NCBI RefSeq assembly: GCF_021869535.1
Contig: NW_026262637.1
Location: 6,324,001 to 6,388,000, forward strand
DNA: 64,000 nt
From: Mytilus californianus
Lineage: Eukaryota
Direction: 5' to 3'
This document shows, piece by piece, positions 12,941 to 63,124 of this stretch (position 1 is the first letter of the stretch; the number at the start of each line of letters is the position of its first letter). A program made the position numbers and the translations under genes. Below the pieces are notes generated by a model. That model was not told where the DNA came from, searched no databases, and saw nothing but the letters and a program-made list of their open reading frames with translations.

Positions 12941-14639
12941 TTTAAAGGATTGACAGTGACAGTAAATATAGCTATAAACACCTACCATTCTTTACTTTAT
13001 GCTCAGTTATTCAAACAGTTTGTCATCTTTGTTTTTGTTTGTTTTTTATTTCTTCCTGCTAAGTAATTGTCACGTGATATATATAGATATGTCTCAAGCA
13101 GTGACACCTGGTCGGGCCTTAGTGTTCAAATATGTCACACTTTTTGCCCTAAGAAATTAAACATTTTCCTAAGGAAAAAAATATTTGAAACACGTTTTAA
13201 CATGTTTGAAATCTAAGCACAATTAGAGTGTAGGACGAGCAAAAACACATAATTTTATGCTGGATCTTTTAGCACACTGCATACATTGAGAATCAAATTA
13301 TCGTATTATATTTGGAGAACTTGTAAAAATTGGTGAGTTTTTGATTAGGTTCCTTTCTTTCTTCTCCCGTTTTCTATTTATTTCCTTTTGAAAGATAATG
13401 TATCGTGTAGGTCATCAGTAAAAGTACAAATCCTTTTCATTTTATATTTTATTCAGAAGTCACTTACCAACATGAATTGAGTTAATTATTTATATTAATA
13501 GACTTATCTCTCTCTTGAGACACAAAATTGAAAAAAAAACTCTTGACGTGTTCATTTATATTCATGTGATATCTGTCATTAAAAGTAGAACTATAAATGT
13601 AAAAATGATCATATACAGAAACAATATATTGTGTACATTCAATAAAAAAGAGGGCATCCCCACATTTTATTCAGAGTACTCAATGGAATATCTCAAATGT
13701 TAGAAACTTCACCTTAAATTTGTGGATTGAATCCTTTATCATATTTATTATATTAAGGTACTTGTATGTTTGATTATTTGACCTATCCAATTTAACGACA
13801 TTCATTCTCGCCAATTTTGATCCATTGAAGTCAGAATATATGTACTGTTTCGGGTTCTGGACGTTGGCTTTCGCTTTTCAAACATGCCAATAGGGCATTG
13901 TTGTATCAAGGATTAAGATTTTCTCTTTTTCAGTTCAGATCACAGCTGTTGAGACAAGTGGATTCTACAGAATAACGCTTTCTAAATAACTGGTTGGTTG
14001 ATTGATTATCTTTTTTTTTTGAAAGTAAATATCTTTTATTACATATCTGCTGTTTTAACAATTTACTCGGATTACAGCGTTGATTGATTATCGCTGAAAG
14101 TCTTTTCAGTACAAAATGCTTATTGGAGATAAATACACAAGCGACAAATAAGTTAACACACGTTATATTGTACCTATAAATTGGCGAAAAATCAATATTC
14201 ATTTTTGGTGCAAATGAAATACAACCTTGAGACGAAAAATTAAATACTGCATTTTTTAAATATTGGTACAAGTGCAATGACCCCTTTAACAGGATGTTTT
14301 TGCACTTTCCAAGCAATGTTGACCGCATGTCACAATGAAAAGCAATTAAGGAACACTTAATTCAATAACAATTAATTGTCTAGGGTCGCTAAACTTTATT
14401 AGAAAGATAATTAGTAATATGTATATTACAAGGAAAGCTTTGTTCAGTAATGAATAAGTTTGTGGTACCACCTCTTCAGACCAGACTATGTAATGAAAAT
14501 AGCACTTTATAGATTTATAGTCATTTTTTTGGTATTCTTGTCTTTCATTTTTGTGTATTTGCTTTGTCTATATGACATTTTGGTTTTCTTTGTTCACCTA
14601 CTTGTTTGTTTTTATATGGATTGATATTATAACACAATA

Positions 14640-14910
14640 TTTAAAAGAAGATGTGGTATGAGTGCCAATAAGACAACTCTCCATCCAAGTCACAATTTGT
14701 AAAAAGTAAACCATTATTGGTCAAAGTACGTCCTTCAACACGACTCACACGCAACAGCAAGCTGTAAAGGGCTCCAAAATGACTAGTGTAAAACAATTCA
14801 AACAGGAAAACCAACGGTCTAATATATATAAAAAACGAGAAACACTTATGAACCACATCAACAAACGACAACCACTGAACAACAGGTTTCTGACTTAGGA
14901 CAGGTGCAAA
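14640..14910 (+). mobile_element. Abundant Helitron-like non-autonomous repeat (AAGAAGATGTGGTATG..GACAACT family)
   Basis: The same family occurs at 18440-18690 (-), 22380-22620, 24575-24950, 45830-46060 (-), 58380-58570 and 59330-59560 (-). Confidence 0.6.
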
Positions 14911-15359
14911 CAAATGCAGCAGGTTTAAACAGCGGTATACTACTGTTGCCTTTATTTAACAGTCGCCAACCTTCACCCTAACATGAAATAGTAGTATAAC
15001 ATTACAATATAGAAAGACACACTATAAAATATAAAATGGCTTAACTCGATCAAAAAGAAATATAAACAAAACATGTAAACATACACTGAAACAAAAAAAT
15101 TTGATCTATGACACAATATAAATACAATATGTAAAACAATGTCAAAAAGACAACTATAACCTGGGACAAAATGGCGTTAAATACAATAACGTACACAGGT
15201 AACTTTAAATATAATCACAACGTTTACTGCTGTACCCCAATTATTGACATTTGTACCTATTATGTCTGTTTGTTTTGCTCACACATTGTTGTCAGTACGT
15301 TCTATTCATGACGACACAAAAACACTCATTTTGATTTTCCGAGAAAAATCGATATAAAC

Positions 15360-16035
15360 GGGTAAATCTACATTGATTTTTTGGACAAAACATAGAGCGC
15401 ATGCGTCGACAAAAATATCTTTTAACACAATGTTTGTCGTGACCTTTTACATATATGTCTTGAATATTTAGTTTCTCTTAATGTTTCCTATGCATTAATT
15501 TGGTTGAAATTCTGACGATTTTGTCCATTTTCGCGAAATTCATATGAGATGTAAAAATAAAAGCTTTAAAATAAATATTTTGACAAAAAAAAGTTCTATT
15601 TAACTTTCTCACATGTCTTTTTATCAACTTGAAACATTTTTTTATCCTGAAACATTGAACTTAATAATCGGGGCCAAATATGGCCCTTACTAATCTTACT
15701 CCTTTACTGCAACAGATGCGCATTTCGACAATCAATGTCTCATCGTAATTAGTCATTATTTAGGCAAAAAAAATTGAAAATCGAAAACATAGTATAAATA
15801 AAGGCAACAGTAGTATACCGCTGTTCAATAGTCATAAACGTTGAAGAGCTGTGTAAAATCGATTTGTTATTTCAAACGAACATTTTGAACATAACAATGG
15901 GACGAATGATGGTGCTCCGGAAAAGTACAACCTCATCGTAGGTACAAGGTCACAACAAACATTATGTTAACAGATTTTGTTTTGTCGACGCATATGCTCT
16001 ATCTTTTTTGTCCAAAATATCAATGTAAATGTCAA
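15360..16035. mobile_element. MITE-like element with ~85-bp inverted repeats and nested insertions
   Basis: 15361-15445 is an imperfect reverse complement of 15947-16035 (core GCGTCGACAAAA / TTTTGTCGACGC). Confidence 0.55.
15709..15750 (-). ncRNA. Degenerate minimal type I hammerhead ribozyme
   Basis: The minus strand reads CGAUGA-GAC AUUGAUU GUC-GAA-AUGCGCAU-C-UGUUGC. The core lacks the U of CUGAUGA and stem I is poorly paired. Confidence 0.6.
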
Positions 16036-16197
16036 TCCGTCAAATAGCTGCGCTTGCAAAAACATGTCAGTCATTGTATTGCATATGATTATCTTTTTAG
16101 TTAAAAGTGCTTGTTAACATTTAAACTGACATTTGCTTGACTTCTATTTCGGCATATCGAAATGTATTTAAGATATATTTTCCCAAATCCCTTAAAA

Positions 16198-16566
16198 TGA
16201 TGATTAGAACGATTACTTGTTGCTGTATTAGTTTCTTATTTCATGCATGGTATCTATTGTTTGATTATAGCCGACCAATAAAACTGCTATTACGGTTCTG
16301 TTGATCATGCCTGCCTTATACGACACCCCTATAATTGTCATGTTTTCATATTTATTTGGTTGCCGAGTTCCATTCTCGTCTTCTTTACTTCATTCTATCT
16401 AAATGTCCAAATATGGCTGAAGATCGATAATGATATTATGTTCTGTATTATGTCTTTGTCTTTAAGTTATCTCGTCGTTCAGGCAAAAACCCCACTTGCC
16501 ATCAAGGAGAATCATGAATCTCAAATGACTACTTACGAAGATGACAAAGTTTACAAGCATAAGTAA
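16198..16566 (+). pseudogene. Internally deleted paralog of the peptide-receptor-like GPCR
   Basis: Aligns to 40506-40645, 41165-41318 and 41415-41505. It lacks ~520 bp (TM2-TM6) and ~100 bp (TM7), and the upstream AG acceptor is mutated to GG (TTTCGGCATATCG). Confidence 0.85.
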
Positions 16567-17571
16567 AATGGTAGTGGATAAAAAATGCTAAATGAATGAC
16601 CACGAAGGATTTCATCCAGAAAGCTACAATATTTTAAATTATGTTATAACGATGTATTTTAGAAATTTTTATTGGTTAGGCTTTGCTTATAGTTGATATC
16701 ATAGTTTGACAATATCTTTTTAAAAATCAGATTCCAAAATAAACAGAATCAAAATTGTGTAAATATTTTTTGAAATAAGTGTTTCAAACTTTAGATTCCT
16801 AAACACTAATTAAATTCAGTATTTCTGTACTTGCAATGCAATAGCAGATTTTCCTTGAAATATATCGATTGATGGAATTCAAACCCCGAAAAATCATATT
16901 AATTCGGTCCAAACGATACATTAAATTACACGACACAGTGAACTTAGTTTGTCCCTGGAGAATGTAATATGGCATAAGTTTTTACTTAATTAAACAATTA
17001 AACAGATACAACAAAGGGTCTTATATCAACGACATATTCATTTGAAAAAAAAATGCTATTCTTAAAAACAATGACGTAATTGGATACTCTCAACCTAGTG
17101 TTTAATACACTAACCCTTCTCTTATTATCACCACTTAGTAAATAACAAAAGTTAAATAGTGGAACGTATACAGTAGTCTATTGAAGGCCATACGAGAACC
17201 TGTAAATGTTTAAATCTTTGTCATTTGGTCTTTGGCGATAGTTGTGCCATTGAAAATTATATACCGCATCTAATTAATATCCAAAATATCGATTCTACAA
17301 CAGAGGCTACAAAATAAACACGTAAAAGTGAAAAAAGGTATTTGAAAGGGATAATGAATGCTTAAGCTTGTAGTAACTGAAATCAAGCTCAGAGTACTGA
17401 ATCTGTTGATATGGAATTTATGCTGTCTTACACTCTAGTATACCAACAGGAAATATGTGTATAGAATATCACAACTGTGAAAAAATTAGCAGAAATATTC
17501 CCGTCGTGTTTTATACTGCGTGTTATATATTTACATTATAGCTGCAAAAGGAAGACTTCTAAATATTTCAT

Positions 17572-17582
17572 TTTATTTTATT
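17572..17582 (-). promoter_or_regulatory. Putative polyadenylation signal(s) of lectin A
   Basis: AATAAA ~65 nt after the stop; the equivalent position is conserved in lectin B (44947-44963). Confidence 0.4.
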
Positions 17583-17646
17583 CAACATTTATAGCAAAGC
17601 CTTTTATGTTGTCTTTTCTGTCAGTGTTTCCTCTTCTATGCTTTAT

Positions 17647-20600
17647 TCAAAAACCTGAAAAAAAGAAACAACATAAATATATTCACTGAACATTTTGTTT
17701 ACTCATTTTAAATTTATTAAATCAATTTAAGTTAATACAATATAATTAGCAATTTAAATGTGATGTGAATATTTCAAAAGTGAAATACACATACAGTTAT
17801 TATGAAAACAAGATTTGTCGTAGTAAGAACTGATCTAACTAACACAAAAACGAAAAGAGGATAATTGGATGTTTACATATCTAAATAACATAGCTTTCAA
17901 CAATAATTAGATATCAATATTGTAGGCAAGGCTATAAATTTTTCATAAAATTTAAATTTATATAACTTAAAATTTAAAACAGAAAATAAGGGGGACCAGT
18001 CACCATTCAAAGAAAGAAATAGTTCATTGTCAAAGACCTTTTACATTTACCAAATTTACGTCTGTTCTAGAGTTTTTGACCTATTTTTACTTTATGTGAA
18101 TCAAATGCAATTAGTATTGAGATGTTTCATGTTATTAGCAAGACGAATTTTAGTCTGGGAAAAATGATTTATTTATCAATTGTAATTGACTTTGAACTAC
18201 CTTTCAGTAATTGCATGTACACTTAGCTCGGGTGTGTCTCTTTGTTAATAATATTTTTGTGTGCGTTGTGTCGATCTGATGTGTCATTCTCAGTTGCTTG
18301 TGCATGCGTGTTTCATCATGTTGTGCTGTTGCAAACACCACTTGACAAGGTATGGGGAGGGTTAAGCAATAGAAAAACATGTTTAACCTATTCACACTCT
18401 GTACGTGCCTGTCCAAGGTCATGAGCGTGAATTTCAGTGGTTGTCGTTGGTTGTACATGTCTGTCATATTTGTTTTTCGTTTTATTGTTAAAGAATAAAT
18501 CAGGCCATTGGTTTTCTCGTTTGAATTGTTTTACATTTTGTCACGGAGGGGCCTTTTATAGCTTACTATACGGTATGGGTTTTGCTCATTGATAAAGGCT
18601 CTATTCTGACTTATAGTTACTTACAGATGCGTCATGTCTCATTTTGATAGTTGTCTCATTTGTAATTATACCGCATCTTCTTATTTTACATTTCAAGACA
18701 AGCTGATTACATTAATTACAAAAGATGTTGATAGATGTGCGATTTCCTGAAAAAGTAAATATAAAGTGACACAATAAAAGGTGAATTGATTTGTTTAAGA
18801 TGTATTCAACGTCCTTCCCCTTATCTAACACTATTAGATATAAACATCATGAATGATTAGTACACAAATTGTACAGGAATCGAACAAAATATTTACAGAA
18901 ATTGCTTTCGCAGATGAATAGTGCCTTGTAATGACAATTGTAATCAAACCAATCTGTTCTACTACCATGTAACATCACACAATTATTGTTAGTGCCCTTG
19001 TCACCGTGACTAGGATACCACGTTTTAAACACAGCTTTCGATTGGTCATACGTCCATCGCCATTCTCCTTCTTTAAGATCTATCAGGCCAATCCAATGAT
19101 GAACAGCTGCAAGAAAAGATAAGGCATATTTAATCTATTTTAATTCTCAATGTTATGACTCAGTTCTGGTTGTACTATGATAATAAATACAACGGACTAA
19201 ACTGTTGCTAAGGATATATAGTACTGTCAACAACAAATTATCACTCTCTGTCCAGGTTGCATGAAATTATTGTGTATGCTAAATTCATAAGTAACATCAT
19301 AACCTTGGATTTTAACATTATCCTTTGGTGTTATAATATGAAGCGAAATGCACTGCATTATCCCAATCAATTTGTATTGCAAAGATGCATACTATAAAGG
19401 TTTGTAAATATTATATTAAAATATACATAGATAAAATCTAAAACGGAAAAAATGTATATGCATAAATCGGAATAAAATTATAGTTCACCAAGACACATTT
19501 AATTAATGTACTGCCTTTTAAAGTGTTTCTGATCATCCTGAGTGTAGCAAAGTTTCCCAAATCACTGACAAAACATGAGTGAGAAGGACAATTGTATCGT
19601 CGTTTTGTTCATAAAAGCTTAAAATTCCGGTGATAAGTCGCGTTCCATAGTAAGTCCCAATCAAGGCACGGAGGACGGAATTATTACTAAGACAAATGGA
19701 ACATTAATCTTTACATACTTGCACTTCTAACGAACCGAAGAAAAAGCCTAAATTTTCTTTCCGCTCCTAAACCTCTAGAAATAAATATGGTATTTTCCGA
19801 CAATATGCATATATATCTACCATTGTCCTTGATATCAATGATAAGACTGGCTACTGGTATGCAAGTTTTAAGTTACATTAACTGAACACAAAAGGTTTCC
19901 AATTATGACATCTGAAGAAAAACCCTCACCTTTATTTGGTCTATTTGCTGCAATGTTGTTGTTTTCCTCTTTGTTGTCAATTTTGACAATATATCCTCCT
20001 ATTTCTCTACATTTCCTCTGTTCAAGAATAAATTTCGGTAGTTTAATAAATATTGATTAAGGCATTGGACAAATTATATGCATTGAAATGTATAGTTTAT
20101 TCAAACTATTGTAAACTGCTTTGTGTTTTTTATCATTCTATTAATATATATTGACCTTTGTAGAAAAATGGAAAAGACTTCAACTTGGAATTGAAATTCC
20201 TTTATATAATGAAGCATTTAACTGCTGGATGCTTAATGGAAATAAAATGACGAATTATTTAAAGTATTATTATTTACTCACTTCAGCCATAAACCAGTCT
20301 ACAGATTCGGAACTGTAATAGTAACAGTGTCCATTATATTTGTTCCATTTAGTTTCTGAAATAAATACAAACAAGTATCGGTTTCTTTTAAAGTCACTAT
20401 CTAAAATATGGTTAATCGTAATTCGATTATAGACCCATAACATTGCTTTAAGATTGCAACTAAATGTGTTAAAATCAAAGGTAACAATAGAAGAGGGGAC
20501 AAAAAATACAAACGACAAACAACACCAAGACAACGGGTTGTCAAACATTTATGTGACGTTTCACTAGTAAATCATTTTGATATGAAACATTTTCATCTGA

Positions 20601-21054
20601 ACAGCTTTTAAAAGACTTAAAAATTATTTATCATGTCATTTTCATTTTCTCAGTAAAGTGTTCGACTTCTCCACTGCGGTAAATTCAGTACTGTGCATAC
20701 AATTAGCTTTGCATTAATAAAATACCTACTGTTGCAACTTCCAACTTTGAGACAACAGTGTCTAAGCTTTTCTTGTATGTACTTACTACGAAAATCTTTT
20801 CCAAGGACTTTAAAATCAGTGTCGAGTTTCTTTATCTTTTGACCCATGGTATTAAGAGATTTTTTAAACATGTCTAGTGTTTTTTTGTTGTCGTTTTCAA
20901 GTTTGATGAGAACTTTTCCAATATTTTCCTGCACATCTGTCAATGCTTTCCTTGATTTGTCAAAGTCTTCCTTAGACTCATTAGAAAGACAGGTTTGACA
21001 AACGATATGCTTGACGACCACAACCAGCAAAGTAATCTGGACTACGAACAGCAT
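17647..21054 (-). CDS. Secreted coiled-coil C-type lectin (perlucin-like), copy A, 215 aa
   Basis: complement(join(17647..17654,18897..19106,19930..20017,20282..20355,20787..21054)). All introns are GT-AG, phases are consistent and the total is 648 nt. Signal peptide MLFVVQITLLVVVV, heptad-rich neck, and a CTLD with GHCYY, RKCREIGGYIVKI, WIGL, NCV, WFD and CHY..FICE. Confidence 0.9.
18270..18690 (-). mobile_element. Helitron-like non-autonomous repeat in lectin A intron 4
   Basis: Reverse-complement match to the 14640/22380 family; the homologous insertion is also present in lectin B intron 4 (45830-46060). Confidence 0.55.
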
Positions 21055-22019
21055 ACTGTAGAACAAACTACAAAAACAACATAATCATTTATGTATCATT
21101 TTCTATTCAAACAAGTATATAAATTCACGTTTATTCGTGTAAACTGCTGTTACGATGCTAGGCTATGAAAGTTTATGGAGTACAATTATGATTTTAAGCT
21201 AAGTCTCTGATAAAACATAATTTATCCGATAAATACATGAATGTGTTCAGTAAGTTGTACTGCTTAACTCTTACCGTTTGGTTTCTTGAGCTTAAATCTG
21301 CCGATTTCATAATGTTTTTGAAACTTAAACGTTTATATATAATCATAATAAACTGCGTATTCCATAAATATGATCGACAGCTTAGGCACGCTATTGTTGA
21401 CCTTTACAGAGGAGGAAGATATTTGTTTTCGTTTTAGTATCACATTATAAAGTTTGGTACTTACCTTGTATATTGTTATGAATAAAAGGAACATGACATC
21501 AATTGGTTATACAGACTTTAATCAAAGACATGGGTACATACAATATATTGAGAGTTAACTCGTCCCAAGTCTAATAAAGTTATGAACACATTTAATAGAG
21601 ACAAAAAATATTACTATTACCACCAAATTATCAAATAGAAAAAGACAATAGACGGCAATAGTTTTATTGAGGAATGAAATGTTAATACATTATTCTTTTT
21701 TTTTTACATTAAATGACTCTTTGTTCTATGTACCCTTCAAGGTACAATACTGTACAGAGAGTTTTCGAATTATTTCTAACGAAATATCGAAACTATGTTG
21801 GCACTTCATTTATATTTTTCCATCAGTGGGGTTCGAACTCCAGCTAAAAGGCAAGCGCCACAGAACAGTTCCTCGTCGTCTCAAACTTGGTTTGTAACAC
21901 AGTATATAATTTTAGTTTCATGGAATTCTTATTGATACATACTTAATAGCGCTAAGTAATATTTTTCTTCCTTTGGTGGTCAAACCAACGGGAATACACA
22001 GCTTTTGCATTATATGTAC

Positions 22020-22280
22020 TTTTTATTGGATTAATCTCAACAAAATGGTGTGAGCTCTTGTGTTATGTATGGGAATGTAAAAAGTAAAATAACAAAAATA
22101 CCGAACTCCAAGAAAAATTAAAAACGGAAAGTCCTTTATCAAATGGCAAATCAAAAGGTCAAACACATCAAACGAATGGAAAACAACTGTCATATTCCTG
22201 ACTTTGTAAAGGCATTTCCTCATGTAGAAAATGATGGATAAAACATGGTTTTATACTAGCTTAACCTCTCACTTGTATGA
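22020..22280 (-). mobile_element. Abundant Mytilus-type non-autonomous repeat (CCTGTACCAAGTCAGGAATATGACAGTTG family)
   Basis: Near-identical copies at 35050-35190 (-), 38630-38830 (+), 48455-48656 (+) and 63125-63320 (-). Confidence 0.75.
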
Positions 22281-22959
22281 GCTGCTTCTTCTCCACCATT
22301 GGCACCCGTCGTGATGCTCAGAACGACAATTGAATAACTACAAAAAATGAGATTTATCAACAATCGCCTTCAGTTAGGACCATAACCATACCGTATAGTA
22401 AGTTATAAAGATCCTCGACATGACAATATATAAAAAATAAAACGAGAAAAACAAACGGCCTGATTATTGCTAAAACAATAAACGAAAAACAAATATGATA
22501 TACAGCAACCAACCACAACCACTGATTACAGGTCCTGAAGTAGAACAGACTTAATTAGAATGCGAAGATGTTAATCATGTTTGTGAGCATATAACCCTTC
22601 CCAAACATCACAATACAAGAATAGTTAAAAAAAAAAACTTGTTTCATCAGAAATAACTTTATATATTTTAAACAAAAAAAAAGGTATTTTCGTGCTACGA
22701 TAAATATGGTCATTTATGATATAGATATTACTTAACGTTCAACCAAGTCATGGTGGTGTTCGTAAATATTTCGACTAGATTACTCAAGCGTCATCTTTTA
22801 GAACCCTTCTTCTTTATATACAGAAAAACATCAACTGGTTGATGATTACTTTCTGGCGCATGCCTTGTTTAACAATATTGTTAATGAATAAAAATATATT
22901 TTTGATTTCATAATAATTTTTCAATTTTTATATATACAAATGTATATGTAAGTAATATT

Positions 22960-24140: not shown

Positions 24141-24157
24141 ATTATAACAATGATCAA

Positions 24158-24343
24158 TAAACTTCCAGCATTGACCACTTCCAAAACCGTGAAATTTGGA
24201 TAGAGTGCTTTGATAGTTGTAGGTATGAAATCTTTCACACTGTGAATTATAAAGCGTTCAATCTCCTTTACTTCATGTTTAGGTATTTGAAATATGAACT
24301 GCTGGTCATGAATATTTTGGATGTATATATCCAAAGACGACAT
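24158..24343 (-). pseudogene. 5' fragment of a cGAS-like receptor (cGLR/Mab-21), copy A
   Basis: MSSLDIYIQNIHDQQ...TVLEVVNAGS is clearly paralogous to 61338-61523. It is preceded by an identical TTTCAG|ATATG acceptor and stops at the GS motif where the LINE begins. Confidence 0.8.
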
Positions 24344-24574
24344 ATCTGAAAGAAAGAAAAAACCAATACAGTTCTAAATAATGTAAAATAACTGGTATCT
24401 TGTTACGATATAAATGCAAATACAATGAAACTGTATCTTGACCTCTAAGCGTCTTTTTTTTGTTATCCTATATTATAATAATATTATATAATAATTCAGT
24501 CAAATTTGCCTGATTAGATTACCTTCTGTTCAAAGGTGATACCTATAAACTTTGCCTACAGTATTGTACAAAGA

Positions 24575-43399: not shown

Positions 43400-43630
43400 A
43401 AAAGCAAAATGCGGAAGATATCAAAGGGACATTCAAAACTCACAATTTGCGAAGAAAAAACTAAAAACGCCATGGTGAAATACGAAAGATAACGAAAAGA
43501 CAAGCAAATACACAAAACACTTCATAAAATCTAAAGACTGAGTAACATGGACCCAACCAAAAATTCGAAGTGACCTGAGGTTTTCCTGAAGGGTTAGCAG
43601 TTCATAATCCACTAGTGTCGCCCGTAATAA
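43400..43630 (-). mobile_element. Naiad-type 3' tail fragment
   Basis: Same motifs as 42378-42560. Confidence 0.65.
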
Positions 43631-52773: not shown

Positions 52774-55700
52774 ATTGTGGAACAAACTACAAAAAGAACA
52801 TAATCATTTATGTATTCATTTTTATCTAAACAAGTATATGCATTGATAATTATTTATTTATTCGTGTATTCTGGTGTTATGATAGGCTATAAAAGTTTAT
52901 AGGATACATAATAATTGTAAGTTACTAACCTGCTAGGACCAGTTTAATGTTCCATCGTTATATGTCAGATTGTACATTTGCATTATATGTTAGAAGGCAT
53001 GTCGCGTAGCTTGCTTTGTTTTCCTGATCTACTATCAACTTTTGTAAGAAGAATTATCCATTTATATAACACGTATAGTTTAAACATATTATTTTTACGC
53101 ATAGTAAAATGCATTGTACATAAGTAAATTATACTGGTAAAGTCCGCTCAGAAATACAGTATATAACAATACAATGTGAATAAAAAATATTATGAGCACG
53201 CACTATTTCGAAATATATAATATTTTACGAGTCTAGATATTGAAAAAGGATGACACGAATAAAAAAGATATATGAGGAAAGATAAAAATATAATAAATAA
53301 CAAACAAATCATCAAACATCACTGTATCGTTTATTTTAGTGTCGTTGGAACACAAACACGAATATAAGGAGATGTGGGATATGCGTCAGTTAGACAGCTA
53401 CTCGACGACAAAAAATAATCAAAAGGCATTTAGATGGCAGCATACAGTCAGGTGTGAATACAATATGTCAAGATCTTAGTCGTCCCAAATCTATAACGTT
53501 ATGAATACATTCAACAATACAATCATTTGTCATCAACACCAATTTCTCTCATTCACAAAAACATTAGAAAAACCAATGACGAGCTTCCAGTCCAGAATAT
53601 GCATATGTCGCTGGGTTTAACATCGCTTTTGTACCCTTCCCATCAGTTGAATTACAAAGGGTCCATACAAACACCCACTATAAAAGCAGTAACAGGAAAG
53701 CCGTTACTCTCAAATAACAGCATCACAGATAACAAAAACACCGCCAAAAACAATAGTTAACAATATAAAACTGTACCAAAGAATGTTGCATTTCCTAAAA
53801 AAACAGCTCAAATGAAAATGTACTATTCTATAGTCTATAGTCGCACCTTTAGGGAAAAATATTTTCAACGTTCTTTCAATCAGCTTTAAACTTTTCATTC
53901 GTTTCTCGAAAAACAAAGATATGGAAATTTTTCCAACGGTAATAACTAGTAAGATTTATTAATGGCCGGAGATTATTTAACATCAAAATGTTTCATGTCT
54001 ACAATTGAAGTAAAATATAACCAAGGTATTTTGTATGATATATTCGATTTAATTTTAGTACACAGAAGTTTCCCTTTGGATAAAGAAAGAATAATTAGGT
54101 ATTGCACCAAAAAAAATAAAGTTTTATATCCAGCTTATAATATATTTCTGATAAAAATTTTATTTATCCGATAAATATATAAATGTTTTTAGAGAATTGT
54201 ATTGCAAAACTCTTACCGTTTGGTTTTTTTGTGCTAAAATCCTCTGATACAGAATATTTTTGAAACGTAAACCATATATTTATGTATAATAATAAACTGC
54301 GCATTTCAAAATAAGTACGACAGCTGAGACACGCTCTTGCTGACCTTTACAATATAGGAAGATTTTTTTTCGTTTTAAGTATCATTTTATAAAATTTGAA
54401 GTCGAATAGATTTATGAACAAATTTAACAGAGACTAAAAACATCTGCTATCAACATCAAGTTCTCTAAATAGAAAAAAAGAAATAGTTTTATTGAGGAAT
54501 GAAATATTAATACATTTTCCAACTTTATTTACATTAAATGACTGTTTGTTTTTTGTACTCTATAAAGTACAATATTGTACAGAGAGTTTTTGTATTATTT
54601 CTAACGAAATATCAAAACTCTGTAAACTTCATTTATATATCTTTCCATCCGCAAGATTCGAACTCTATGTAGGGATAAGCTTAACAGGACAGTTCTTTGC
54701 CGGCTTAAACCTTGGCTGGTAAAAAATGAAAACAACACGTTATAAATTGCAAACGTCCGAAGCGCTTTTCTCGATTTACCTTCATCATAAACGCTCATAA
54801 ATGATTTCAGGTAATTGAATAAAAAGGACATAAATAGCCAAATCCATCTATACCACAGTATATAATTTAAGAAGCATGGAACTCTTATTAGAGATTTCTA
54901 ATTTAATTGACATTACTCGACATAACCAACCTATCTGACCGTATCTCGGCCTATTGCATTAAAGGATGACGGAGGGGAGCATACACTGCATACATTTTTG
55001 GCTTGTTGAATACACATACCTTGTTGGAATAGATGCTATTTAAAAATTAGCACAAACTACTATTTTAATTCTTTACATATTTTGTTATTAAATTTGGGAT
55101 GATTTCATTGACAACAACCTTTAGAGGAATAATTAATTCAGTTACCGGTGATCAAATACACCGATCATTACTTCGTCATTTCACTTGACCCATATATTTA
55201 TCTCTCAAACGATGAATTCTTAAAGCTACTGAATCAAAATTAAGTTTGAAAAAATAAAAATAATGGAATCTGAAGCGAGATCATATTCTCATTTTTGATT
55301 TAAAAGTTATAAGATTAAAACAAGAGTTTCAAACACACCGGAATGTAAAAGGTGTACACGACTTGGTTCTTCTTCTTCTTCTTTTGTTTTAGCATACTTC
55401 TTTAATTTATTTTAAGATACTTTTGTCAGAGGTAAAAATTCAGATCACTGATGCATCTTTCTGATGGTACTTTGTCACCTTTCCGTAGAATTTTATCAAA
55501 TGGAGGACGCATCTTCAAGAACAAATATGATTAAACTTTACTGGATCAGTTATTTTTTTATATCTTTTCTTTAATTATAATGATGCATGGATTATAGGAA
55601 GAGCCCGTACAAACGTATGCGTTATTTAACGTCATTGCTCTTAAATTGTTGTTCTAAAATGTTTGACGTTTAACTTATACAAATACGTATGAAAGACGGA

Positions 55701-56089
55701 CATGTAAGGAATATTTTTTTGCAGTTTTGTTAAGTAGGATTATGATTTTATTTTTGTGACCAACTTATGATAGCAAGGGGATATTATATTTACTGGTCTG
55801 TGCATCCGTCCTAAAACGTTTAAAATTATATACCAAATTAGAGTTTGACCGTATTAAGCGGTGCACTGAACATGGAAATATGATCATGTGAAGAGGCACG
55901 GTGTCTTAAGTCCACACATTCTTGTTGCAAATGTTTTGATTAATACACGTACATGTATATGTATCTTCCATATGCATAACTGTCTCTTTGTCGCCTCAAC
56001 AGTAACCCCTCAAAGTCGATCAGGGGAATAGAAATATGGTCACTATTTTTCTTGTTCCGATCGGCAGTTAAACCAATGCCAAAGTGGGG

Positions 56090-56252
56090 AGTCCGTTTGG
56101 TAGTGCGGGATGTACAAGTACGCAGTCCCGTTCGGTCAGAGCGGGGACGTTAAATCCGATGCCTCTTGTAAAGAGAATGCCACGCTCTCTACACGTTAAT
56201 TTTGCATGAAATATTTGCCACTGGACGTTAAGCAATCAACTATCAATCAATC
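56090..56252 (+). mobile_element. SINE body and tail
   Basis: GGGATGTACAAGTACGCAGTC..GGACGTTAAATCCGATGCC..GCCACTGGACGTTAAGCAATCAAC(AATC)n. Confidence 0.75.
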
Positions 56253-57099
56253 GACAGTAGCGTAACGAATTTTATTTCTGGTGAGGCAAATGATTTGAAT
56301 CTTGGCAGTCAAAGCCTCACCTTGGTTAAAAGACGTCAATGCCAATAGGGAGTGGACGGTTAATCAAAAATATGAATCGCAAAATAGGTGTTGGTGATCA
56401 TACTCTTGATAGGTCACACACTGGCAAACAGACCCTGTCTAGGAAAAATTCAGATTTGTGGAATTTTATCATGAAATAATATTTCTAGTGCGCATTAAAT
56501 CAATATATTTCAATAAAACTGCTGGTTAAAGGTTTATTTCTCAGTATTCAGTTACAGACAGGTCCTGATCAAAACAAAAATAATTGACAGAATCATATGT
56601 ATGACATCCTCTAAAATTGTTTTGTACAGATTTTGGGGTATTAATAGTTTAAGATCCACTATGTCTTTTAACTTTATACGTTTCGCTTTTGTCAAAATGT
56701 ATGGATGATAATAACTGGGTGAACTATGCAGTCTTGCTTAAATTAACCAAGGAAGAAGAGTACTACCTAAAATGTAGGAATGCCAAGTGTCTGTTGAAAA
56801 CTTTGTCCACCAAAAGTAACAAGTTCGTTGTCAAAAAAAAATCAAGCATCATATCAGTTTCGCAGTCATGGCCTCTTGTTTGAATCAGTTTTTTGCGAGG
56901 TATACCTTGTCTGTTACTCAAAAAGAAATTTTCATCTACCTTGTTCATTTTATGAAAGAAAGTGTTCAAGACGCAAATAATGAGGAATGAGTGAGTAAAG
57001 CTGTCAATGTTTTGAACCGTCGTCACTCAGTTTACTTTATACTATGACGGACATGGTATATAATTCTCTTTATATCTCTTTTTTAATGGTAAAAAATTT

Positions 57100-57300
57100 A
57101 GTGAGGCAGTTGCCTCATTGCGTCAATGAAAGCTACACCACAGCTCGAGTGCGGGAAGTCTTGGGCTCGATCCTCGCCCGTTTCAAATCGAAGATTGACT
57201 ACCTCTCTGCGAAGCACGCAATATTTAGGAGTTAGAGCAAGGATTGGTCGGTCCGGGGTCAAAATCATGTGTCCGGGTAGGATGACATGTCTTCCTCCGT
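57100..57300 (+). mobile_element. tRNA-derived SINE (same family as 32945-33163)
   Basis: B-box-like GGCTCGATCC and a shared core. Confidence 0.7.
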
Positions 57301-59829
57301 ATAATACAAAGTCTGGTTCATATTCATCTTCTCGTCCTAAATATGCGTATATGTAAAATACATATGCAACGAACACTTATATATATGACCCTACTTCCTA
57401 TTAATACTCCTATTTGTTTGTTCCACTTCTAACGTTGCCTATATCCCCCCTTTTTCAAAATCCTGGATCCGCATCTGGCAACGAAATCTTATTATATTAT
57501 GTTGTTCAATGTTACTTACCTTACTCATTTCCGTTAATGATTTATTCAGTAAAATGAATTCGGTGACCCCCTTTTTAATTAAAATACTATAAGTTAATTT
57601 ACTTCAAGGTATATAAAAAGAATTGCCTGGAAATGTCTTTTGTATTCAGACTCCGATAGCATTCCTGTTAAACAAATTAATACAGAACAAATCTAATCGA
57701 ACACATCTTAATTCTAAAAAACAACATATATAGGGAATTTTTTTATCAATACATTTTATAAATAAATAATTGATAAATACTTTTGTTTAGAAATTAAATA
57801 GAACCGATAGTAAAATAATTGTCATAATCAAACCCATGAAAGATAACTCAAATCGTACGTATGATAGGTATGGGATACGTGTGTTTATACGTGATCTTAT
57901 GTCAGTGAAAATAAAGGCGGGAATCTGGAAAACCACGTGATAAATAAAAATGCAAGATTTCTATAATTTTTCGTCATGATAAAATTATTTTATAAATTCC
58001 AGTGTGTGATTGAAAAAGTCTTGGAATAGATTGTTTAAACTTGAGCGACGTATTTAATCAAATGCAATGGTTGGCAATAACCAGTCCCATTAGGTCTGTA
58101 CGTCGAGTTACGCACGTATGTCATTTTATTGGAAATCTCTATTGGTACATACTTAACTACTCTAAGTAATATTTCCTTCATTATCCAGTCGAAGCAACGG
58201 GTATACAAGGCTTTTGCATCATGTATACTTCTAATTAAATTAAACCCAACAAAGTCAACTATCATTTTTGTACTGGTCCTATGTTTCGGGATGTAAGCTG
58301 CTTGTACTCCACCATTGGCACACGTCCTGATGATCATAACGACAATTAGTACAACAATAAAGATTAAGTACGTATAGCCTTCAGAAAGGACCATAACCAT
58401 AGCGTATATAAGTTATAAAGATCCTCGACATGACAAAATGTAAAAATTTGAAACGATAAAACATATATACAGTAATAAATGACAACCACTGAATACAAGT
58501 TCTGATGTAGGACAGGCATACATAGAATGTGAAGAGGTTAATCATGTTTGTGAGCTCACAGCCCTCTTCTAACATGGTAAAAGTTATGTAACAGCACGTA
58601 ATAAGAATATACTGTAAAAACCAGTTACAAAATATTTGACTCACCAGCCATAAGTTAATATATAAAAAAACAAAAAAAAAACAGAATCGTTTCGTAGCTT
58701 CGATAAATATGGTCATCGATGATATAGATATTACTTTACGTTCAACCATGTCATGGTGGTGTTCATAAATATTTCGGTGAGATTACTCTAGCTTCATCTT
58801 TTTGAATCCTTGGTTTAATAGTTCCCGTCTAATCGGCAATCCTCTATTTAGCACATCGTTCCTGAAAAAACTGCGAGATAAATACTCAGATGTTGCTGGA
58901 AAGTTTAAACATAGAAATAGAAAGTTTTATTTGGTGTTCATGCATTAGCAAAACATTATCGCAAACAGCATCTGCATGGCATTACTTTGATAAACGAACA
59001 ATTTTTATTTTCTATATATACGTATAGATTATTGGGTTTTCTGCACATTGATATCACAAAATGTCTGCCGCGAGCCACAATGTGAACCATTTCGGAGAGC
59101 GAACGAGCAAAAATCTCCCGAATGTGTCGAGCGGCTGATATTTTACTGTATCTGTACGCAGAAAACCCGATAGCATTGTGGCGTCGATGATAACTTCTCC
59201 ACAGACATTGTGACGTTGTTGATATTTCCTGCCAGGTTTGAAAAGGCGTGATACGAAAATTACGGAGCAAACAGAGCAGGGTAATAAGGGCGAAGGGAAT
59301 GACGATAATCAAGAACACAAAAAAAGACTTAGGAGCTTATTGTTCAGTGGTTGTCGTTTTTTGGTGTGGTTCATAAGTGTTTCTCGTTTCTCGTTTTTTA
59401 TATAGATTAGACCGTTGGTTTTCCTGTTTGAACTGTTTTACACCAGTCTTTTTGGGACCCTTTATATCTTGCTGTTCGTTGTGAGCCATTGCTCCGTGTT
59501 GAAGGCCATACTTTAACCTATAATTGTTTACTTTTTACACATTGGCACTCATACGATATCTTCTCGTTTTTGTGCAGTCTAAAATCCAATGATCAGACGC
59601 TTAAACGAAGAAAAACAATGCAGACATATTGCTTTAATGTTGGAAAAATACAAATCATAAAAAAGGTAAAGTAAAACATCAATAAGGACTATACGACATG
59701 TTAATCTCATTGACAAGAAGAAAGTTGATGAGATACCGAAGAACAGACAACGCCATGGGAAAAATCATAACGACCAATAATAGTGCATAAAAAGCTACAC
59801 AGAGAAATAAAACTCGATTTGACATAATC

Positions 59830-60345
59830 GGTCATCTCATTACCAGAATCTATGACAAATGAGACGATTTTAATTTTGAAATTATAAATTTCCTCCACCT
59901 TAGCAGGAATATACCAACTTCACTTGCATATGGGATATACATTTCCCAACTCATTCGGTATCCAAGAGCTTGCAGCTGCTACTCAGACTTTATTAAACGC
60001 CACAAGTGTCTGAGCAGAAAGTTGATGAACAAGGGTTATGTCAAAGAACGTCTCGTTATTTTTCTATAAAAGTTCATCGGGAGATACCAAGACCTTGTTG
60101 ATAAATATTCCGTATCAACTTTACAAATAATACATGATGGTCTTGAAGTATAATTTCATGGTACTGACGTTGTTTATCATCTTAATACATGTTATAGTGT
60201 TCCTTTTATTTGTCTTTGTATATTTTTAACCTTTACTGTTTAGTCCGTTTTTGGTAATATCTGTTTGACGTGGCTCAGTATTTATACATCCCGCCATTGT
60301 GTTATTGTACTTTGTTCAGTTTTTGTATTCTTGTCTTTCATTTTT
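59830..60345 (+). mobile_element. Naiad-type RT 3' fragment plus tail (second subfamily), preceded by an inverted tail fragment at ~59720-59800
   Basis: Near-identical to 27830-28140. Confidence 0.8.
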
Positions 60346-60349
60346 GCTT

Positions 60350-61523
60350 ATGTACTTGATGTGCTTTAGAAATATATTTCCTTGTACATTTAATGTAGCA
60401 AGACTGTGCTCATCAAAGATGATACTACGAATGTGGTACACTTCGATAGAGTGCCTACAAATACAGCCTGTCCATTGAACAATAATTTTTGAAAACAACA
60501 AATTTTGGCTTTCTAAAGCTGGCATCTTTTCAAAAATCCGGAAGATCATAAACAAAAGTATTCTTTACCATTTTGTGAACTATGTGTAAGATAGAGAGAA
60601 CCATTGATTTTAGTTAGTATGAATCTATCTCAGAATATTCAACGTACGAGAAGAGTAACTTTGTGCATTTATATATAATTTTCAAGTTCTCGTCTTTTGC
60701 AATTTTCTTAACTTCTGACTTCTTGTAAGAAGTAAGCCTGCAAAGATTTTTTTCTGTTACAAATTGAAGTACTACACGGTTTAAGAACAATGTGACGACC
60801 ATTTTTTTTTTATCAATAAAGGATTGGATAATGAGATGGTGGAGAGTATTTCAGAAAATATATATAAAGGGAAATGGCAACATGTCATCATATCTACACA
60901 AATGTTCACATTTTCATTGTCTATAGTCTTGGTGATATCGGAACGTTGAAACACTATTTCTTCTCAAGTTGAGCATTGTTTTCGTTTTCAGATAAAGTTA
61001 GGTTTCTGACGGTGTGAAAAAACTAAGTTAAGTTTCCCTTTTACTACGGCGTCCTGGTATGTCAAAGTTCCATACTCAACTTTATATACAGGAACTAATG
61101 AAACCGCCTGTATCAGATACGCATTAAAGCTCAGAATCGATATCGATATCGATATCTCAAATCCCTTCTCCGATGTTTATTCCATCCCAGAGCTATGCCA
61201 TCTTCTTTTTTGTTGTAGCTCGACGTTTGCATATCCCGGTATACATCCTTTTTGTATTTGCACTGATACAGGCGTTGACAACTCTCTCACGAATACCATT
61301 CGAATTTATCCGGGTTCTTGACCTTAGTGTGCTCAAAATAACTTCCAGCATTGACAGTTTCAAAAACCGTAAAACTTGGATTGAGTGCTTTGATAGTTGT
61401 AGGTATAAAATCTTTTACAATCTGAATTATAAAGCTTTCACTCTTCTGTACTTCATTTTTAAGTAATTGAAATGTGCACTGCTGGTCATGAAGATTGTGG
61501 ATGTATATATCTAAAGATGACAT
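60350..61523 (-). pseudogene. cGAS-like receptor (cGLR; Mab-21 nucleotidyltransferase) pseudogene, copy B
   Basis: GSYFEHTKVKNPDKFE (cGAS-type GSxxExxKxxxPxEFD), then across frameshifts PGYANVEL, ICVDMM (third catalytic Asp position), HIVLKPC, CRLTSYKKSE (WRLSFSxxE-like), YKCTKLL and IDSY*LKSMVL (SYxLK). It has at least 3 frameshifts and several stops. Confidence 0.82.
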
Positions 61524-61591
61524 ATCTGAAAGAAAACAATTCAGTTTTAAATGGTGTAGAATAACTAGTTTCTGTTTACTGTTTAATTTAT

Positions 61592-62640
61592 AGATAATGC
61601 ATATTTTAAGGTTTTTATTGTCGTATAACACACAGAAGGGTGTCAGGATTGATCAAATGAAAGGCCGACCGTAGGGAGGTCTTTCTTTCGGCAATCCTGA
61701 GAACCCGAGGTGTGTTATACGACAAGAAAAACCATAACATATGCATTATCTGACTTATATGACGTAAAAAATATTATTTTCTGCAAAGATTTGCAGGATT
61801 TTCATCCTTTTTACCGACAACACTAAAGTGGAATATTCCTTTCTGATGCGTTCAGGTTTTAATACGCCCTACGGCTTATGTGTAATGTAAAATAAAACTC
61901 ACTAATTAATCTAGATAAAAACGTTAGCAATCATTATCCAGCTACAATAGAAATATCACAGAAGCTGCATGAAGCAAGACGCAAATGAAATGTTACGGTG
62001 TATGAAAAATACAAGTCACTTTGTAAGTAATTTATTGTATCACTTAGTTTCTGGAAGGGGGAACCTATATCTTTTTTCTTTTTCATGACATTTTCATCGC
62101 GGAAAAACAGATGATTTTTTCAACAATTTTTAACGAACTCTTCAGAGTAATTGTTTTTTTTTCACTTTTGAATGGCAATATATTTTTTTTAAACAGATAC
62201 CTTAGTCAGAATTAAATCGTATACCCTCCCCCTCTCCGCCCCATCATAAAGTAAGTGGCTGTTATTATATAGAAATTAGCAATATTTGGTCAATTGATCA
62301 TTTCATAGAGTAAAAGCTTGTTTTTAAAGAGTTATGGAAAGTTTTGAATTATTAAATTCATCTCAAATAATGTCCCTTTATTGTAGCGATAAATTAACAA
62401 AACTTCACAATATTTGTTTCGAAAGTTAAAATATGCGATTTTTTGTATAACAAACAGAGGACAGGATTATTTGTGCCTTAATCAACAACACACGATAACT
62501 ATCAAACGAATTAAATGTTTAAGTAAATAATAGATTGCATTTTAATCAAGAAAAATAATGACCTTACACCTTGCCTTGAAGCAAATTGATTCTTCAACAG
62601 AGAGACCTGTCGTTCTGAAAGAAAATAACTTCACATAGGT
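61592..62640. mobile_element. ~1.05-kb insertion beginning with a 160-bp palindrome (61592-61751); possibly tyrosine-recombinase (Crypton)-type non-autonomous
   Basis: Arms GGTTTTTATTGTCGTATAACACAC / GTGTGTTATACGACAAGAAAAACC (23/24 match). The insertion is absent from copy A, where ...TGTTACG joins directly to ATATAAATGCAAATAC at ~24408. Confidence 0.55.
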
Positions 62641-63124
62641 ATATAAATGCAAATACAGTCTTCAGATAGTATGTTGACCTCTAGGTGTCTTTATGCTATT
62701 TGTTATCTTACAAACCTTTTCGTGCATTTTTCATTGTTATTCAACGCAAAATAAGTATATATGATACCTGGGACAATCTAATTATATAAAGGATTTCTTT
62801 TGTTTACTTATGTTACTTAGAACTTATCAACCCGGTGTAGGTTTTTAAGTTGAGGTTCTTTTTACTAAAAGTTATTCGGGCATGACTCATTAGACTAACA
62901 ACCTTAGAATCAGAGGGTTCAAAATAGGATCGGGAAAAAAACGGCCAGCGAAATACCATAATTCACAATTTCAAAGAACTAGACTGCCTTTGGTTGATTA
63001 AACCGGGTTAATAATCAGACGGTATTAGAGTGGAAATCCAACCTGTCCTAAACCGGCTGCAATAGGAATTTATTTACAAATAAGTACATATCTTATTTAC
63101 TTAAAAAGTGGCCGTTATTGCCTG

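What the first reader, a model, noticed from the sequence alone, without database searches (positions are those of the whole stretch)
13215..62720. Duplicated GPCR + C-type lectin + cGAS-like receptor cassette
Two collinear copies each contain, in the same order and orientation, a peptide-receptor-like GPCR (+), a secreted lectin (-) and a cGLR (-). An extracellular pattern-recognition protein, a membrane receptor and a cytosolic nucleic-acid sensor thus travel as one duplication unit. Introns and intergenic DNA are heavily diverged and filled with different TEs, yet both lectins stay intact while the GPCR and cGLR decay independently in each copy. This looks like birth-and-death evolution of an innate-immune cluster. 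Functional linkage among the three genes is only inferred and could be hitchhiking.
Basis: partly seen in the sequence, partly recalled or inferred. Interest (0 to 1): 0.8.

Follow-up and report, generated by a model that had tools for sequence, protein, structure and literature searches.

The report
Duplicated cGLR–lectin–GPCR unit in mussel
Two neighbouring copies of a three-gene block (a cGAS-like enzyme gene, a secreted C-type lectin gene and a G-protein-coupled receptor gene) really exist in this California mussel window, but they are two units of a longer tandem array in which only the lectins stay alive, which is ordinary turnover of immune genes in bivalves.

Summary
The window is Mytilus californianus scaffold JAKFGE010000015.1, about 6.324-6.388 Mb. 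Copy A (13231-24426) and copy B (37997-61586) are collinear in 16 blocks, about 76% identical.

Each copy holds three genes in the same order:
- **GPCR (+):** an intronless rhodopsin-class receptor.
- **Lectin (-):** a 215-aa signal-peptide, helical-neck, C-type lectin.
- **cGLR (-):** an intronless Mab-21/cGAS-like gene.

Both lectins have intact reading frames and canonical splice sites. Lectin A is transcribed and spliced exactly as modelled. All four other genes are dead, each by different lesions.

The pair belongs to an array of at least five units spanning more than 130 kb. An intact cGLR (P0030) lies about 39 kb beyond the window.

The cGLR-then-lectin pair recurs in M. trossulus, M. 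edulis and M. galloprovincialis. M. coruscus gene models fuse the two. The GPCR joins the unit only in A, B and B's M. edulis orthologue. It is intact only in M. galloprovincialis, where no lectin lies within 10 kb.

The lectin has its own TATA box and 5' exon. More distant cGLR loci have no lectin nearby. The evidence therefore favours hitch-hiking during tandem duplication followed by birth-and-death turnover, not a functional module.

The scan has noted other cGLR clusters in this genome, but not this unit.

The parts
37997..61586 (.). Duplication unit B (23.6 kb)
   Evidence: Collinear chain with unit A. Collinear with M. edulis locus L007 from about 54398 down to 37267. The right end is set by homology with unit Z in L010.
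13231..24426 (.). Duplication unit A (11.2 kb)
   Evidence: Collinear chain with unit B, 16 blocks, about 76% identity.
60364..61523 (-). cGLR-B, an intronless Mab-21/cGAS-like pseudogene
   Evidence: TBLASTN with Mab-21 relatives. Against the intact paralogue gene: frameshifts of -4 at codon 75 (inside the catalytic motif), +4 at 235, -2 at 253 and -134 at 306. In-frame stops at codons 117, 176 and 184. Truncated after codon 429.
44945..54245 (-). Lectin B gene. 5' exon ends near 54218. Coding exons: 52773-52506, 52159-52086, 51687-51600, 46523-46314 and 45035-45028, followed by the 3'UTR and AATAAA.
   Evidence: The spliced model gives a 215-aa open frame with all introns GT-AG. The terminal exon and poly(A) signal are conserved. 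Pfam Lectin_C. Expression was not tested.
40506..41507 (+). GPCR-B, single exon, one nonsense codon (TGA at 41256-41258)
   Evidence: There are no indels against M. galloprovincialis P0001 and nucleotide identity is 88.9%. Codon 251 is TGA here but TGG in copy A, M. edulis and M. galloprovincialis. Pfam 7tm_1.
24161..24343 (-). cGLR-A stub (first 61 codons only)
   Evidence: TBLASTN gives 81-84% identity to relatives and ends at the GS motif.
23013..24122 (-). 5'-truncated LINE-type reverse transcriptase that replaces the rest of cGLR-A
   Evidence: Pfam RVT_1, 8.8e-26. It begins 39 bases past the stub and has no counterpart in unit B.
17562..21300 (-). Lectin A gene. TATA box near 21339 and 5' exon ending at 21276. 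Exons: 21068-20787 (ATG at 21054), 20355-20282, 20017-19930, 19106-18897 and 17654-17562.
   Evidence: Transcript contigs of three runs carry the joints 20355|20787, 20017|20282, 19106|19930 and 17652|18895. The upstream 5' exon was located. The translation is identical to P0016.
16140..16713 (+). GPCR-A remnant
   Evidence: It matches B at 40456-40636, 41173-41318 and 41420-41591 at 75-79% identity. About 540-560 bp covering TM2-TM6 are deleted and stops are present. No RNA depth.
21206..21456 (-). Conserved lectin promoter and 5'UTR block (counterpart in B: 54147-54398)
   Evidence: Conserved between A and B and in every related locus: L002, L004-L008 and L010. It contains the TATA box and the 5' exon used in transcripts.

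Best explanation
The window holds two adjacent units (B, then A, reading along the minus strand) of a tandem array on a Mytilus californianus chromosome.

The ancestral unit had three genes. An intronless cGAS-like (Mab-21) gene came first. A few kb downstream on the same strand lay a secreted C-type lectin gene with five coding exons and its own TATA promoter. In the A/B lineage, a convergent intronless rhodopsin-class GPCR followed.

Whole units were copied by tandem segmental duplication. Unequal crossing-over is the presumed mechanism (inferred).

The A/B event predates the split of M. californianus from the M. edulis group. Lectin dS between A and B is about 0.37, against about 0.2 for orthologues, and B groups with an M. 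edulis lectin.

After duplication, selection kept the lectins. The neck exon is strongly constrained and the ligand-side exon evolves faster. The redundant cGLR and GPCR copies decayed independently, and transposable elements inflated the spacers.

**Shown here:** the duplication, the gene identities, the lesions, lectin A transcription and the recurrence of the pair in other species.

**Inferred:** the duplication mechanism, the selective interpretation, and that the linkage reflects hitch-hiking.
For: - **Collinear chain:**
- **Window identity and array extent:** L009 maps to the window at 100% and shows units C and D to the left. L010 shows unit Z with the intact 484-aa cGLR P0030, and a lectin 4 kb downstream.
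- **Pair recurrence:** M. trossulus L005 has an intact 483-aa cGLR 3.8 kb upstream of a lectin. L006, M. edulis L002 and L004, and M. galloprovincialis L008 also carry the pair. M. coruscus has fused gene models.
- **GPCR distribution:** a GPCR lies next to a lectin only in A, B and M. edulis L007.
- **Lectin tree:** (calB, eduL007) has 98% support and calA lies outside that pair.
- **Selection:** lectin A-B dN/dS is 0.14 for exon 1, 0.39 for the lectin domain and 0.62 for exon 4, with dS about 0.37. The intact cGLR Z against M. trossulus gives dN/dS 0.31 and dS 0.20.
- **Independent lesions:**
- **Lectin A mRNA:** all introns are removed and it uses its own terminal exon. The GPCR-A remnant has zero RNA depth.
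- **Own promoter:** a TATA box and 5' exon.
Against: - Lectin B's expression was not tested.
- The A/B timing rests on short coding alignments. Exon 4 of A and B are each other's closest match, which suggests gene conversion and blurs the dating.
- A 13.6-kb stretch between the units has no counterpart in B, and cGLR-A's upstream flank resembles unit Z rather than B. The history is therefore more complex than one simple tandem event.
- Whether B's M. edulis orthologue also keeps a cGLR could not be seen within the 10-kb flank.
- The single TGA in GPCR-B could be an allele of the sequenced animal or a sequencing error.
Confidence: 0.85

Rival explanations
1. The three genes form a functional immune module. 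An extracellular lectin, a membrane receptor and a cytosolic nucleotide-signalling sensor are kept together by selection for co-regulation or co-inheritance.
For: The cGLR-then-lectin adjacency has the same order, strand and few-kb spacing in at least ten units of four Mytilus species, and M. coruscus models fuse the two. Intact cGLRs sit at two of those units. M. coruscus gene models read from the cGLR into the lectin.
Against: - All units descend from one ancestor, so recurrence is inheritance and not independent evidence.
- The cGLR is broken in most units while the neighbouring lectin persists.
- The GPCR is absent from most units, dead in A, B and M. edulis, and its only intact copy has no lectin within 10 kb.
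- The lectin has its own TATA box and 5' exon, and is transcribed beside a dead cGLR.
- Two more distant cGLR loci have no lectin or GPCR within 10 kb.
Confidence: 0.1
2. It is an assembly artefact. A and B are two haplotypes, or a falsely duplicated segment, placed side by side.
For: Mussel genomes are highly heterozygous and rich in presence/absence variation (general knowledge, not tested here).
Against: A and B differ by about 24% in non-coding DNA and by dS 0.37 in the lectin. They carry different transposable elements and lesions. B has its own M. edulis orthologue that excludes A. The NCBI assembly contains both at 100% identity to the window.
Confidence: 0.02
3. The resemblance between A and B is only shared dispersed repeats, and the gene fragments are unrelated.
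For: Several repeat families occur in both units, for example 22076-22274 with four further copies, and 27801-28137 with 59817-60152.
Against: Sixteen ordered, same-strand blocks include all lectin exons, the GPCR and the cGLR start. These are unique sequences with orthologues in other species.
Confidence: 0.01

Closest known systems
Tandemly duplicated immune gene families of bivalves evolving by birth and death (for example C1q-domain genes, PMC6835236, and C-type lectins, PMC10140915)
   Same: Lineage-specific tandem copies. Some paralogues are kept and diversify on the binding surface, others become pseudogenes, and the spacers are rich in transposable elements.
   Different: The repeated unit here is heterotypic: a cGLR plus a lectin, sometimes plus a GPCR. 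No cGLR-lectin pairing is mentioned in the C-type lectin survey or in the cGLR census that I searched.
cGAS-like receptors (cGLRs) of animals, strongly radiated in bivalves (PMC9980059)
   Same: The intact paralogue P0030 has the cGAS fold, with a GS motif and the E..D...D catalytic residues. Its best solved relative by sequence is 'cGAS-like receptor 1' (8gjy, 1.9e-16).
   Different: The two copies inside the window are dead. In copy B the catalytic E and D read K and E, beside a 4-base deletion. No activity, ligand or product is known for this subfamily.
Collectin/tetranectin-type secreted C-type lectins with a helical neck; NCBI name 'perlucin-like'
   Same: An N-terminal hydrophobic leader, a long helix (residues about 25-81 in the model), then one C-type lectin domain with the WIGL motif and conserved cysteines.
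   Different: No EPN/QPD motif and no WND motif (PSH or SGY, and WFD, stand in their place), so calcium-dependent sugar binding is doubtful. Oligomer state is unknown and the fold model was of low confidence.
Srw / FMRFamide-peptide-receptor-like rhodopsin-class GPCRs
   Same: A single exon of about 332 aa with seven hydrophobic segments. Pfam Srw 6e-8 and 7tm_1 2e-7. The nearest solved structure is the neuromedin-K receptor.
   Different: The similarity is weak. 'VQR' and 'NIWVY' stand where the DRY and NPxxY motifs are expected. Only one intact homologue was found in the protein search.

Membership tests
cGAS-like receptor (Mab-21 nucleotidyltransferase) | cGAS/Mab-21 bilobed nucleotidyltransferase fold | tested here: met
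   Tested on the intact paralogue P0030, 84-86% identical in DNA to copy B. AlphaFold2 mean pLDDT 83. Foldseek best hits are cGAS and beetle cGLR, E 1e-10, TM by target 0.62-0.71. Profile against PDB: cGLR1 8gjy 1.9e-16 and cGAS 6e-11. Pfam Mab-21 27.6 bits against a cut-off of 24.1.
cGAS-like receptor (Mab-21 nucleotidyltransferase) | Catalytic G-S motif, [E/D]-h-[E/D] and a third acidic residue | tested here: not met
   For the window's own copies it is not met. Copy B reads D-K-F-E where relatives read D-E-F-D, next to a 4-base deletion. Copy A ends at the GS motif. In P0030 and 11 relatives, G60, S61, E73, D75 and D208 are invariant.
cGAS-like receptor (Mab-21 nucleotidyltransferase) | Ligand-activated synthesis of a cyclic (di)nucleotide signal | not testable with these tools
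   This needs recombinant P0030 or the M. trossulus orthologue assayed with nucleic acids and NTPs.
C-type lectin domain protein | C-type lectin domain with WIGL and conserved cysteines | tested here: met
   Pfam Lectin_C 6.5e-17 for lectin A. Exon 4 of A and B score 1e-10 and 3.4e-9. Invariant C100, C117, C186 and W148-I-G-L, and near-invariant C201, C209 and C214, in 11 homologues.
C-type lectin domain protein | Calcium/carbohydrate motifs EPN or QPD, plus WND | tested here: not met
   Read directly from the sequence. A has P-S-H and B has S-G-Y at the EPN position, and both have W-F-D instead of WND.
Rhodopsin-class GPCR | Seven-transmembrane rhodopsin-family profile | tested here: met
   The intact orthologue P0001 scores 7tm_1 31.0 bits (cut-off 30.5) and Srw 32.7 bits (cut-off 22.2). 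Copy B scores 7tm_1 30.6 bits. Both are barely above threshold.
Rhodopsin-class GPCR | Intact reading frame in this genome | tested here: not met
   Copy B has TGA at codon 251. Copy A lacks TM2-TM6. No other intact M. californianus homologue appeared in the word-based protein search.
Tandem segmental duplication with birth-and-death turnover | Collinear same-strand paralogous segments with some members kept and others independently disabled | tested here: met
   Collinear chain of 16 blocks. Lectins intact. Lesions not shared between copies. Further units Z, C and D.
Co-regulated functional gene cluster | Shared regulation, or functional dependence among members | not tested
   The only indirect evidence is negative. 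The lectin has its own promoter and is expressed beside a dead cGLR.

The most novel reading that the evidence does not exclude
The conserved head-to-tail cGLR-lectin pair is a true two-part immune module. An intact cGLR at the head of the array (P0030) would be co-regulated with, or would signal to induce, the downstream battery of diversified secreted lectins, and the array would grow by copying the whole module. A related possibility rests on NCBI isoforms that join exons of lectin A to exons of lectin C, 41 kb away. If those are real, the array could generate combinatorial lectin variants by splicing between copies.
Probability: 0.08. Interest if true: 0.7.

Novelty: new member of a known kind. 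Interest (0 to 1): 0.35.

Why it matters
The finding gives a clean, dated example of how bivalve immune repertoires grow. A multi-gene segment is copied repeatedly, selection keeps one gene type (the secreted lectin), and the passengers decay.

It also marks a cGLR subfamily whose intact members (P0030 in M. californianus and the 483-aa M. trossulus gene) always sit just upstream of a lectin. That is a concrete, testable pairing for anyone asking whether extracellular and cytosolic sensing are coordinated in molluscs.

In practical terms, it shows that the current NCBI 'perlucin-like' gene model merges more than 130 kb of separate lectin genes. That will distort gene counts and expression estimates.

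Tried and rejected
1. I first took the 144-aa ORF at 20653-21084 for the cGLR. Pfam and PDB searches gave only chance coiled-coil hits. It is lectin exon 1, holding the leader and the helical neck.
2. Pfam on single ORF pieces of cGLR-B and the cGLR-A stub gave no Mab-21 hit. Against PDB, the 121-aa piece reached only E 0.1, although all 12 hits were cGAS. Identification needed the exhaustive representative search and Pfam on its hits.
3. The AlphaFold2 model of lectin A was poor (mean pLDDT 44.5), so no fold search was made. The lectin call rests on Pfam and conserved motifs.
4. Pfam on ten ORFs from B-specific insertions and the A-B spacer found nothing. Apart from one reverse-transcriptase ORF, the transposable-element content is inferred from repetition alone.
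5. A MAFFT alignment of GPCR-A to the intact gene was unreliable because of the large deletion. BLAST blocks were used instead.
6. The chain algorithm preferred a repeat pair (27801-28137 with 59817-60152) over the true last anchor (24151-24355 with 61330-61535). I corrected this by hand.
7. The cGLR-lectin pairing was not found beside two more distant cGLR relatives.
8. Literature searches found no description of a cGLR-lectin unit.
Full report
**What the window is.** Locus L009, fetched through the NCBI protein P0016 ('perlucin-like protein isoform X14', Mytilus californianus), matches window 1-31054 at 100% identity. The window is therefore GCA_021869535.1 scaffold JAKFGE010000015.1, about 6,324,001-6,388,000. 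It has no N runs and is about 32% G+C throughout.

**The duplication.** Self-BLASTN gives an ordered, same-strand chain of 16 blocks.
- It runs from A 13231-13476 / B 37997-38262 to A 24151-24355 / B 61330-61535.
- About 5.7 kb aligns at about 76% identity.
- Comparison with a third unit (L010) puts the right ends near 24426 and 61586.
- Unit A is 11.2 kb and unit B is 23.6 kb.
- The extra length of B lies in lectin intron 3 (5.1 kb against 0.8 kb) and in the lectin-cGLR spacer (7.6 kb against 3.1 kb).
- A repeat family of about 200 bp has five copies in the window, including one in each of these places.

**GPCR.** Copy B (40506-41507, + strand) is one exon.
- It has no indels against the intact 332-aa M. 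galloprovincialis protein P0001 and is 88.9% identical in DNA.
- Its only lesion is TGA at codon 251 (41256-41258). Copy A, M. edulis and M. galloprovincialis all have TGG there.
- dN/dS against the M. galloprovincialis gene is 0.5-0.6.
- Copy A (16140-16713) keeps the start, TM7 and the tail at 75-79% identity to B. It lacks about 540-560 bp covering TM2-TM6 and contains stops.
- P0001 passes Pfam Srw (32.7 bits) and 7tm_1 (31.0 bits) narrowly. Its nearest solved structure is the neuromedin-K receptor at 8.7e-5.
- 'Peptide-receptor-like' is therefore a weak label.

**Lectin.** The ORF I first suspected of being the cGLR (20653-21084) is lectin exon 1, which holds a hydrophobic leader and a long helix. 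The gene has a short 5' exon and five coding exons.
- For copy A, contigs of three runs labelled as guessed RNA show all four coding introns removed. The joints are 20355|20787, 20017|20282, 19106|19930 and 17652|18895, all GT-AG on the minus strand.
- Beyond 21068, the contigs continue with letters that match 21276-21297 exactly.
- That 5' exon lies about 60 bases below a TATATAAA box, inside the block 21206-21456.
- This block is conserved in unit B (54147-54398) and in every related locus.
- The last exon carries only the end of a Cys codon, a Phe codon and the stop, then about 90 bases of 3'UTR with AATAAA. Both A and B have their own copy of it.
- Both spliced models translate to 215 aa. 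A is identical to P0016, and A and B share 173 of 215 residues.
- Pfam Lectin_C scores 6.5e-17.
- The EPN/QPD and WND motifs are absent (read directly from the sequence).
- Between A and B, dS is about 0.37. dN/dS is 0.14 in exon 1, 0.39 in the lectin domain and 0.62 in exon 4.
- Lectin B's expression was not tested.

**cGLR.** The 121-aa ORF at 61290-61652 (minus strand) found 13 relatives in the exhaustive search. All ten that I scanned against Pfam carry Mab-21 domains.
- TBLASTN maps an intronless pseudogene at 61523-60364 in B, and only codons 1-61 (24343-24161) in A.
- Against the intact paralogue gene, B has frameshifts at codons 75, 235, 253 and 306 (the last a 134-bp deletion).
- B also has stops at codons 117, 176 and 184, and is cut off after codon 429.
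- The first frameshift lies in the catalytic motif, which reads D-K-F-E instead of D-E-F-D.
- In A, a 5'-truncated reverse-transcriptase ORF (24122-23013, Pfam RVT_1 8.8e-26) follows the stub. The sequence matching B 61330-58811 is missing.
- No disabling lesion is shared by A and B, so both genes were probably intact when the segment was copied.

**Is it really a cGAS-like receptor?** I tested the intact paralogue P0030 (484 aa).
- A 12-sequence profile hits 'cGAS-like receptor 1' (8gjy) at 1.9e-16 and cGAS at 6e-11.
- The AlphaFold2 model has mean pLDDT 83.
- Foldseek puts cGAS and a beetle cGLR on top (E 1e-10, TM by target 0.62-0.71).
- G60, S61, E73, D75 and D208 are invariant in the family.
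- P0030 against the M. trossulus orthologue gives dN/dS 0.31, as expected for a working gene.

**The wider array.**
- *To the right of the window:* unit Z (L010) lies about 35-40 kb beyond the end. It has intact P0030 and a lectin exon 1 about 4 kb downstream, with the same intergenic blocks.
- *To the left (L009):* unit C has a broken cGLR and a lectin. Unit D is a lectin with a stop in exon 1 and a mutated splice donor. Neither has a GPCR.
- *M. trossulus:* L005 has an intact 483-aa cGLR 3.8 kb upstream of lectin P0018. L006, 412 kb away, has a deleted cGLR upstream of lectin P0022. The two lectins are sister copies with 100% support, so that duplication is separate and younger.
- *M. edulis:* L002 and L004 carry the pair, as does M. 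galloprovincialis L008, with one or more lesions in the cGLR.
- *M. galloprovincialis L003:* it holds a further cGLR copy interrupted by a 1.5-kb insertion, with no lectin seen in the locus.
- *M. coruscus:* the models P0031 and P0038 fuse the cGLR and lectin sequences.
- Of about ten lectin-linked cGLR copies, two are clearly intact.

**Where the GPCR belongs.** M. edulis L007 is collinear with unit B from about 54398 to 37267.
- It includes the lectin (P0023) and a convergent GPCR whose lesions differ from B's: stops at codons 5, 18 and 44, and two frameshifts.
- In the lectin tree, B pairs with L007 at 98% support and A lies outside the pair. The A/B duplication is therefore older than the split from the M. 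edulis group.
- The 10-kb flank of L007 ends before the place where a cGLR would be expected.
- No GPCR lies within about 9-10 kb downstream of the lectins in L004, L005, L006, L008 or unit C.
- The only intact GPCR (L001) has no lectin or cGLR within 10 kb.
- The GPCR was therefore swept into the unit in one sub-lineage only.

**Function or hitch-hiking?** Five points argue for hitch-hiking.
- All the pairs descend from one ancestor, so their recurrence is not independent evidence.
- The cGLR decays in most units while the lectin survives.
- The lectin has its own core promoter and is expressed next to a dead cGLR.
- Two more distant cGLR loci (57% and 35% identical, L011 and L012) have neither a lectin nor a GPCR within 10 kb.
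- Bivalves carry very many cGLRs and C-type lectins (PMC9980059, PMC10140915), so a chance first adjacency is unremarkable.

I rate a true functional module at about 0.1.

**Novelty.** The papers I could search do not mention a cGLR-lectin unit. Earlier notes of this scan list other cGLR clusters in this genome, but not this one. The kind of event, tandem copying of immune genes followed by birth-and-death turnover, is well known in bivalves (PMC6835236). I file this as a new member of a known kind, of modest interest.

**Limits.**
- Neighbouring loci were visible only to 10 kb on each side.
- Lectin B's expression, GPCR-B's allele status and any co-expression are untested.
- The lectin fold model failed.
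- The dating rests on short alignments, with signs of gene conversion in exon 4.

Noticed in passing
L009:10001-56678 and L010:15424-21455 (same scaffold as the window): NCBI merges more than 130 kb of separate lectin copies into one 'perlucin-like' gene with at least 15 isoforms. Isoform X13 (P0015) joins exons 1-2 of lectin A to exons 3-4 of lectin C, 41 kb away. X14 uses A's four exons but a terminal exon behind unit C. Transcript contigs instead show lectin A using its own terminal exon at 17654-17562.
   Followed up: partly
P0031 and P0038 (M. coruscus gene models): Two annotated M. coruscus proteins are fusions of the cGLR and the lectin. This is either a prediction artefact across a short spacer or a hint of read-through transcription.
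   Followed up: no
P0030 residues 238-258 and 447-483 (L010:10001-11455): The cGLR family has a C-H-x5-C-x4-C-x6-C pattern, with H240, C246, C251 and C258 invariant and C239 nearly so. It recalls (from memory) the zinc-thumb spacing of vertebrate cGAS. The family also has a long C-terminal, partly hydrophobic helix that could anchor it to a membrane.
   Followed up: no
window 19930-20017 (lectin A exon 3): Transcript contigs of two runs differ from the genome at 7 of 88 bases in exon 3 but at only 1-2 bases in the flanking exons. A third run matches exactly. This could be a very divergent allele or gene conversion from another array copy.
   Followed up: no
window 22076-22274, 35064-35184, 38630-38824, 48464-48655, 63123-63322: A dispersed repeat family of about 200 bp, 87-91% identical, in both orientations, also present in the related loci of other Mytilus species. 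It is probably a SINE or MITE.
   Followed up: no
window 10748-12909, 27547-28137, 59817-60152: A run of same-strand ORFs without Pfam hits, whose tail recurs at two other places (up to 90% identical) and in L010 and L008. This is a degenerate retroelement-like repeat that sits just left of unit A and inside unit B.
   Followed up: partly
L006:1490-2367 and 7415-8292 (M. trossulus): The lectin-upstream blocks occur twice in inverted orientation, flanking the deleted cGLR remnant. An inverted duplication therefore accompanied cGLR loss in that unit.
   Followed up: no
L010:15678-15819: Lectin Z exon 1 carries an internal repeat of the neck region. This fits the 251-252-aa isoforms (36 residues longer than lectins A and B).
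   Followed up: partly
window 29567-29962 and 31268-31960: Local tandem duplicates (192 bp twice at 97% identity, and about 137-bp units at 93%) lie in the spacer between units A and B, near the hammerhead-ribozyme note of another first-stage finding.
   Followed up: no
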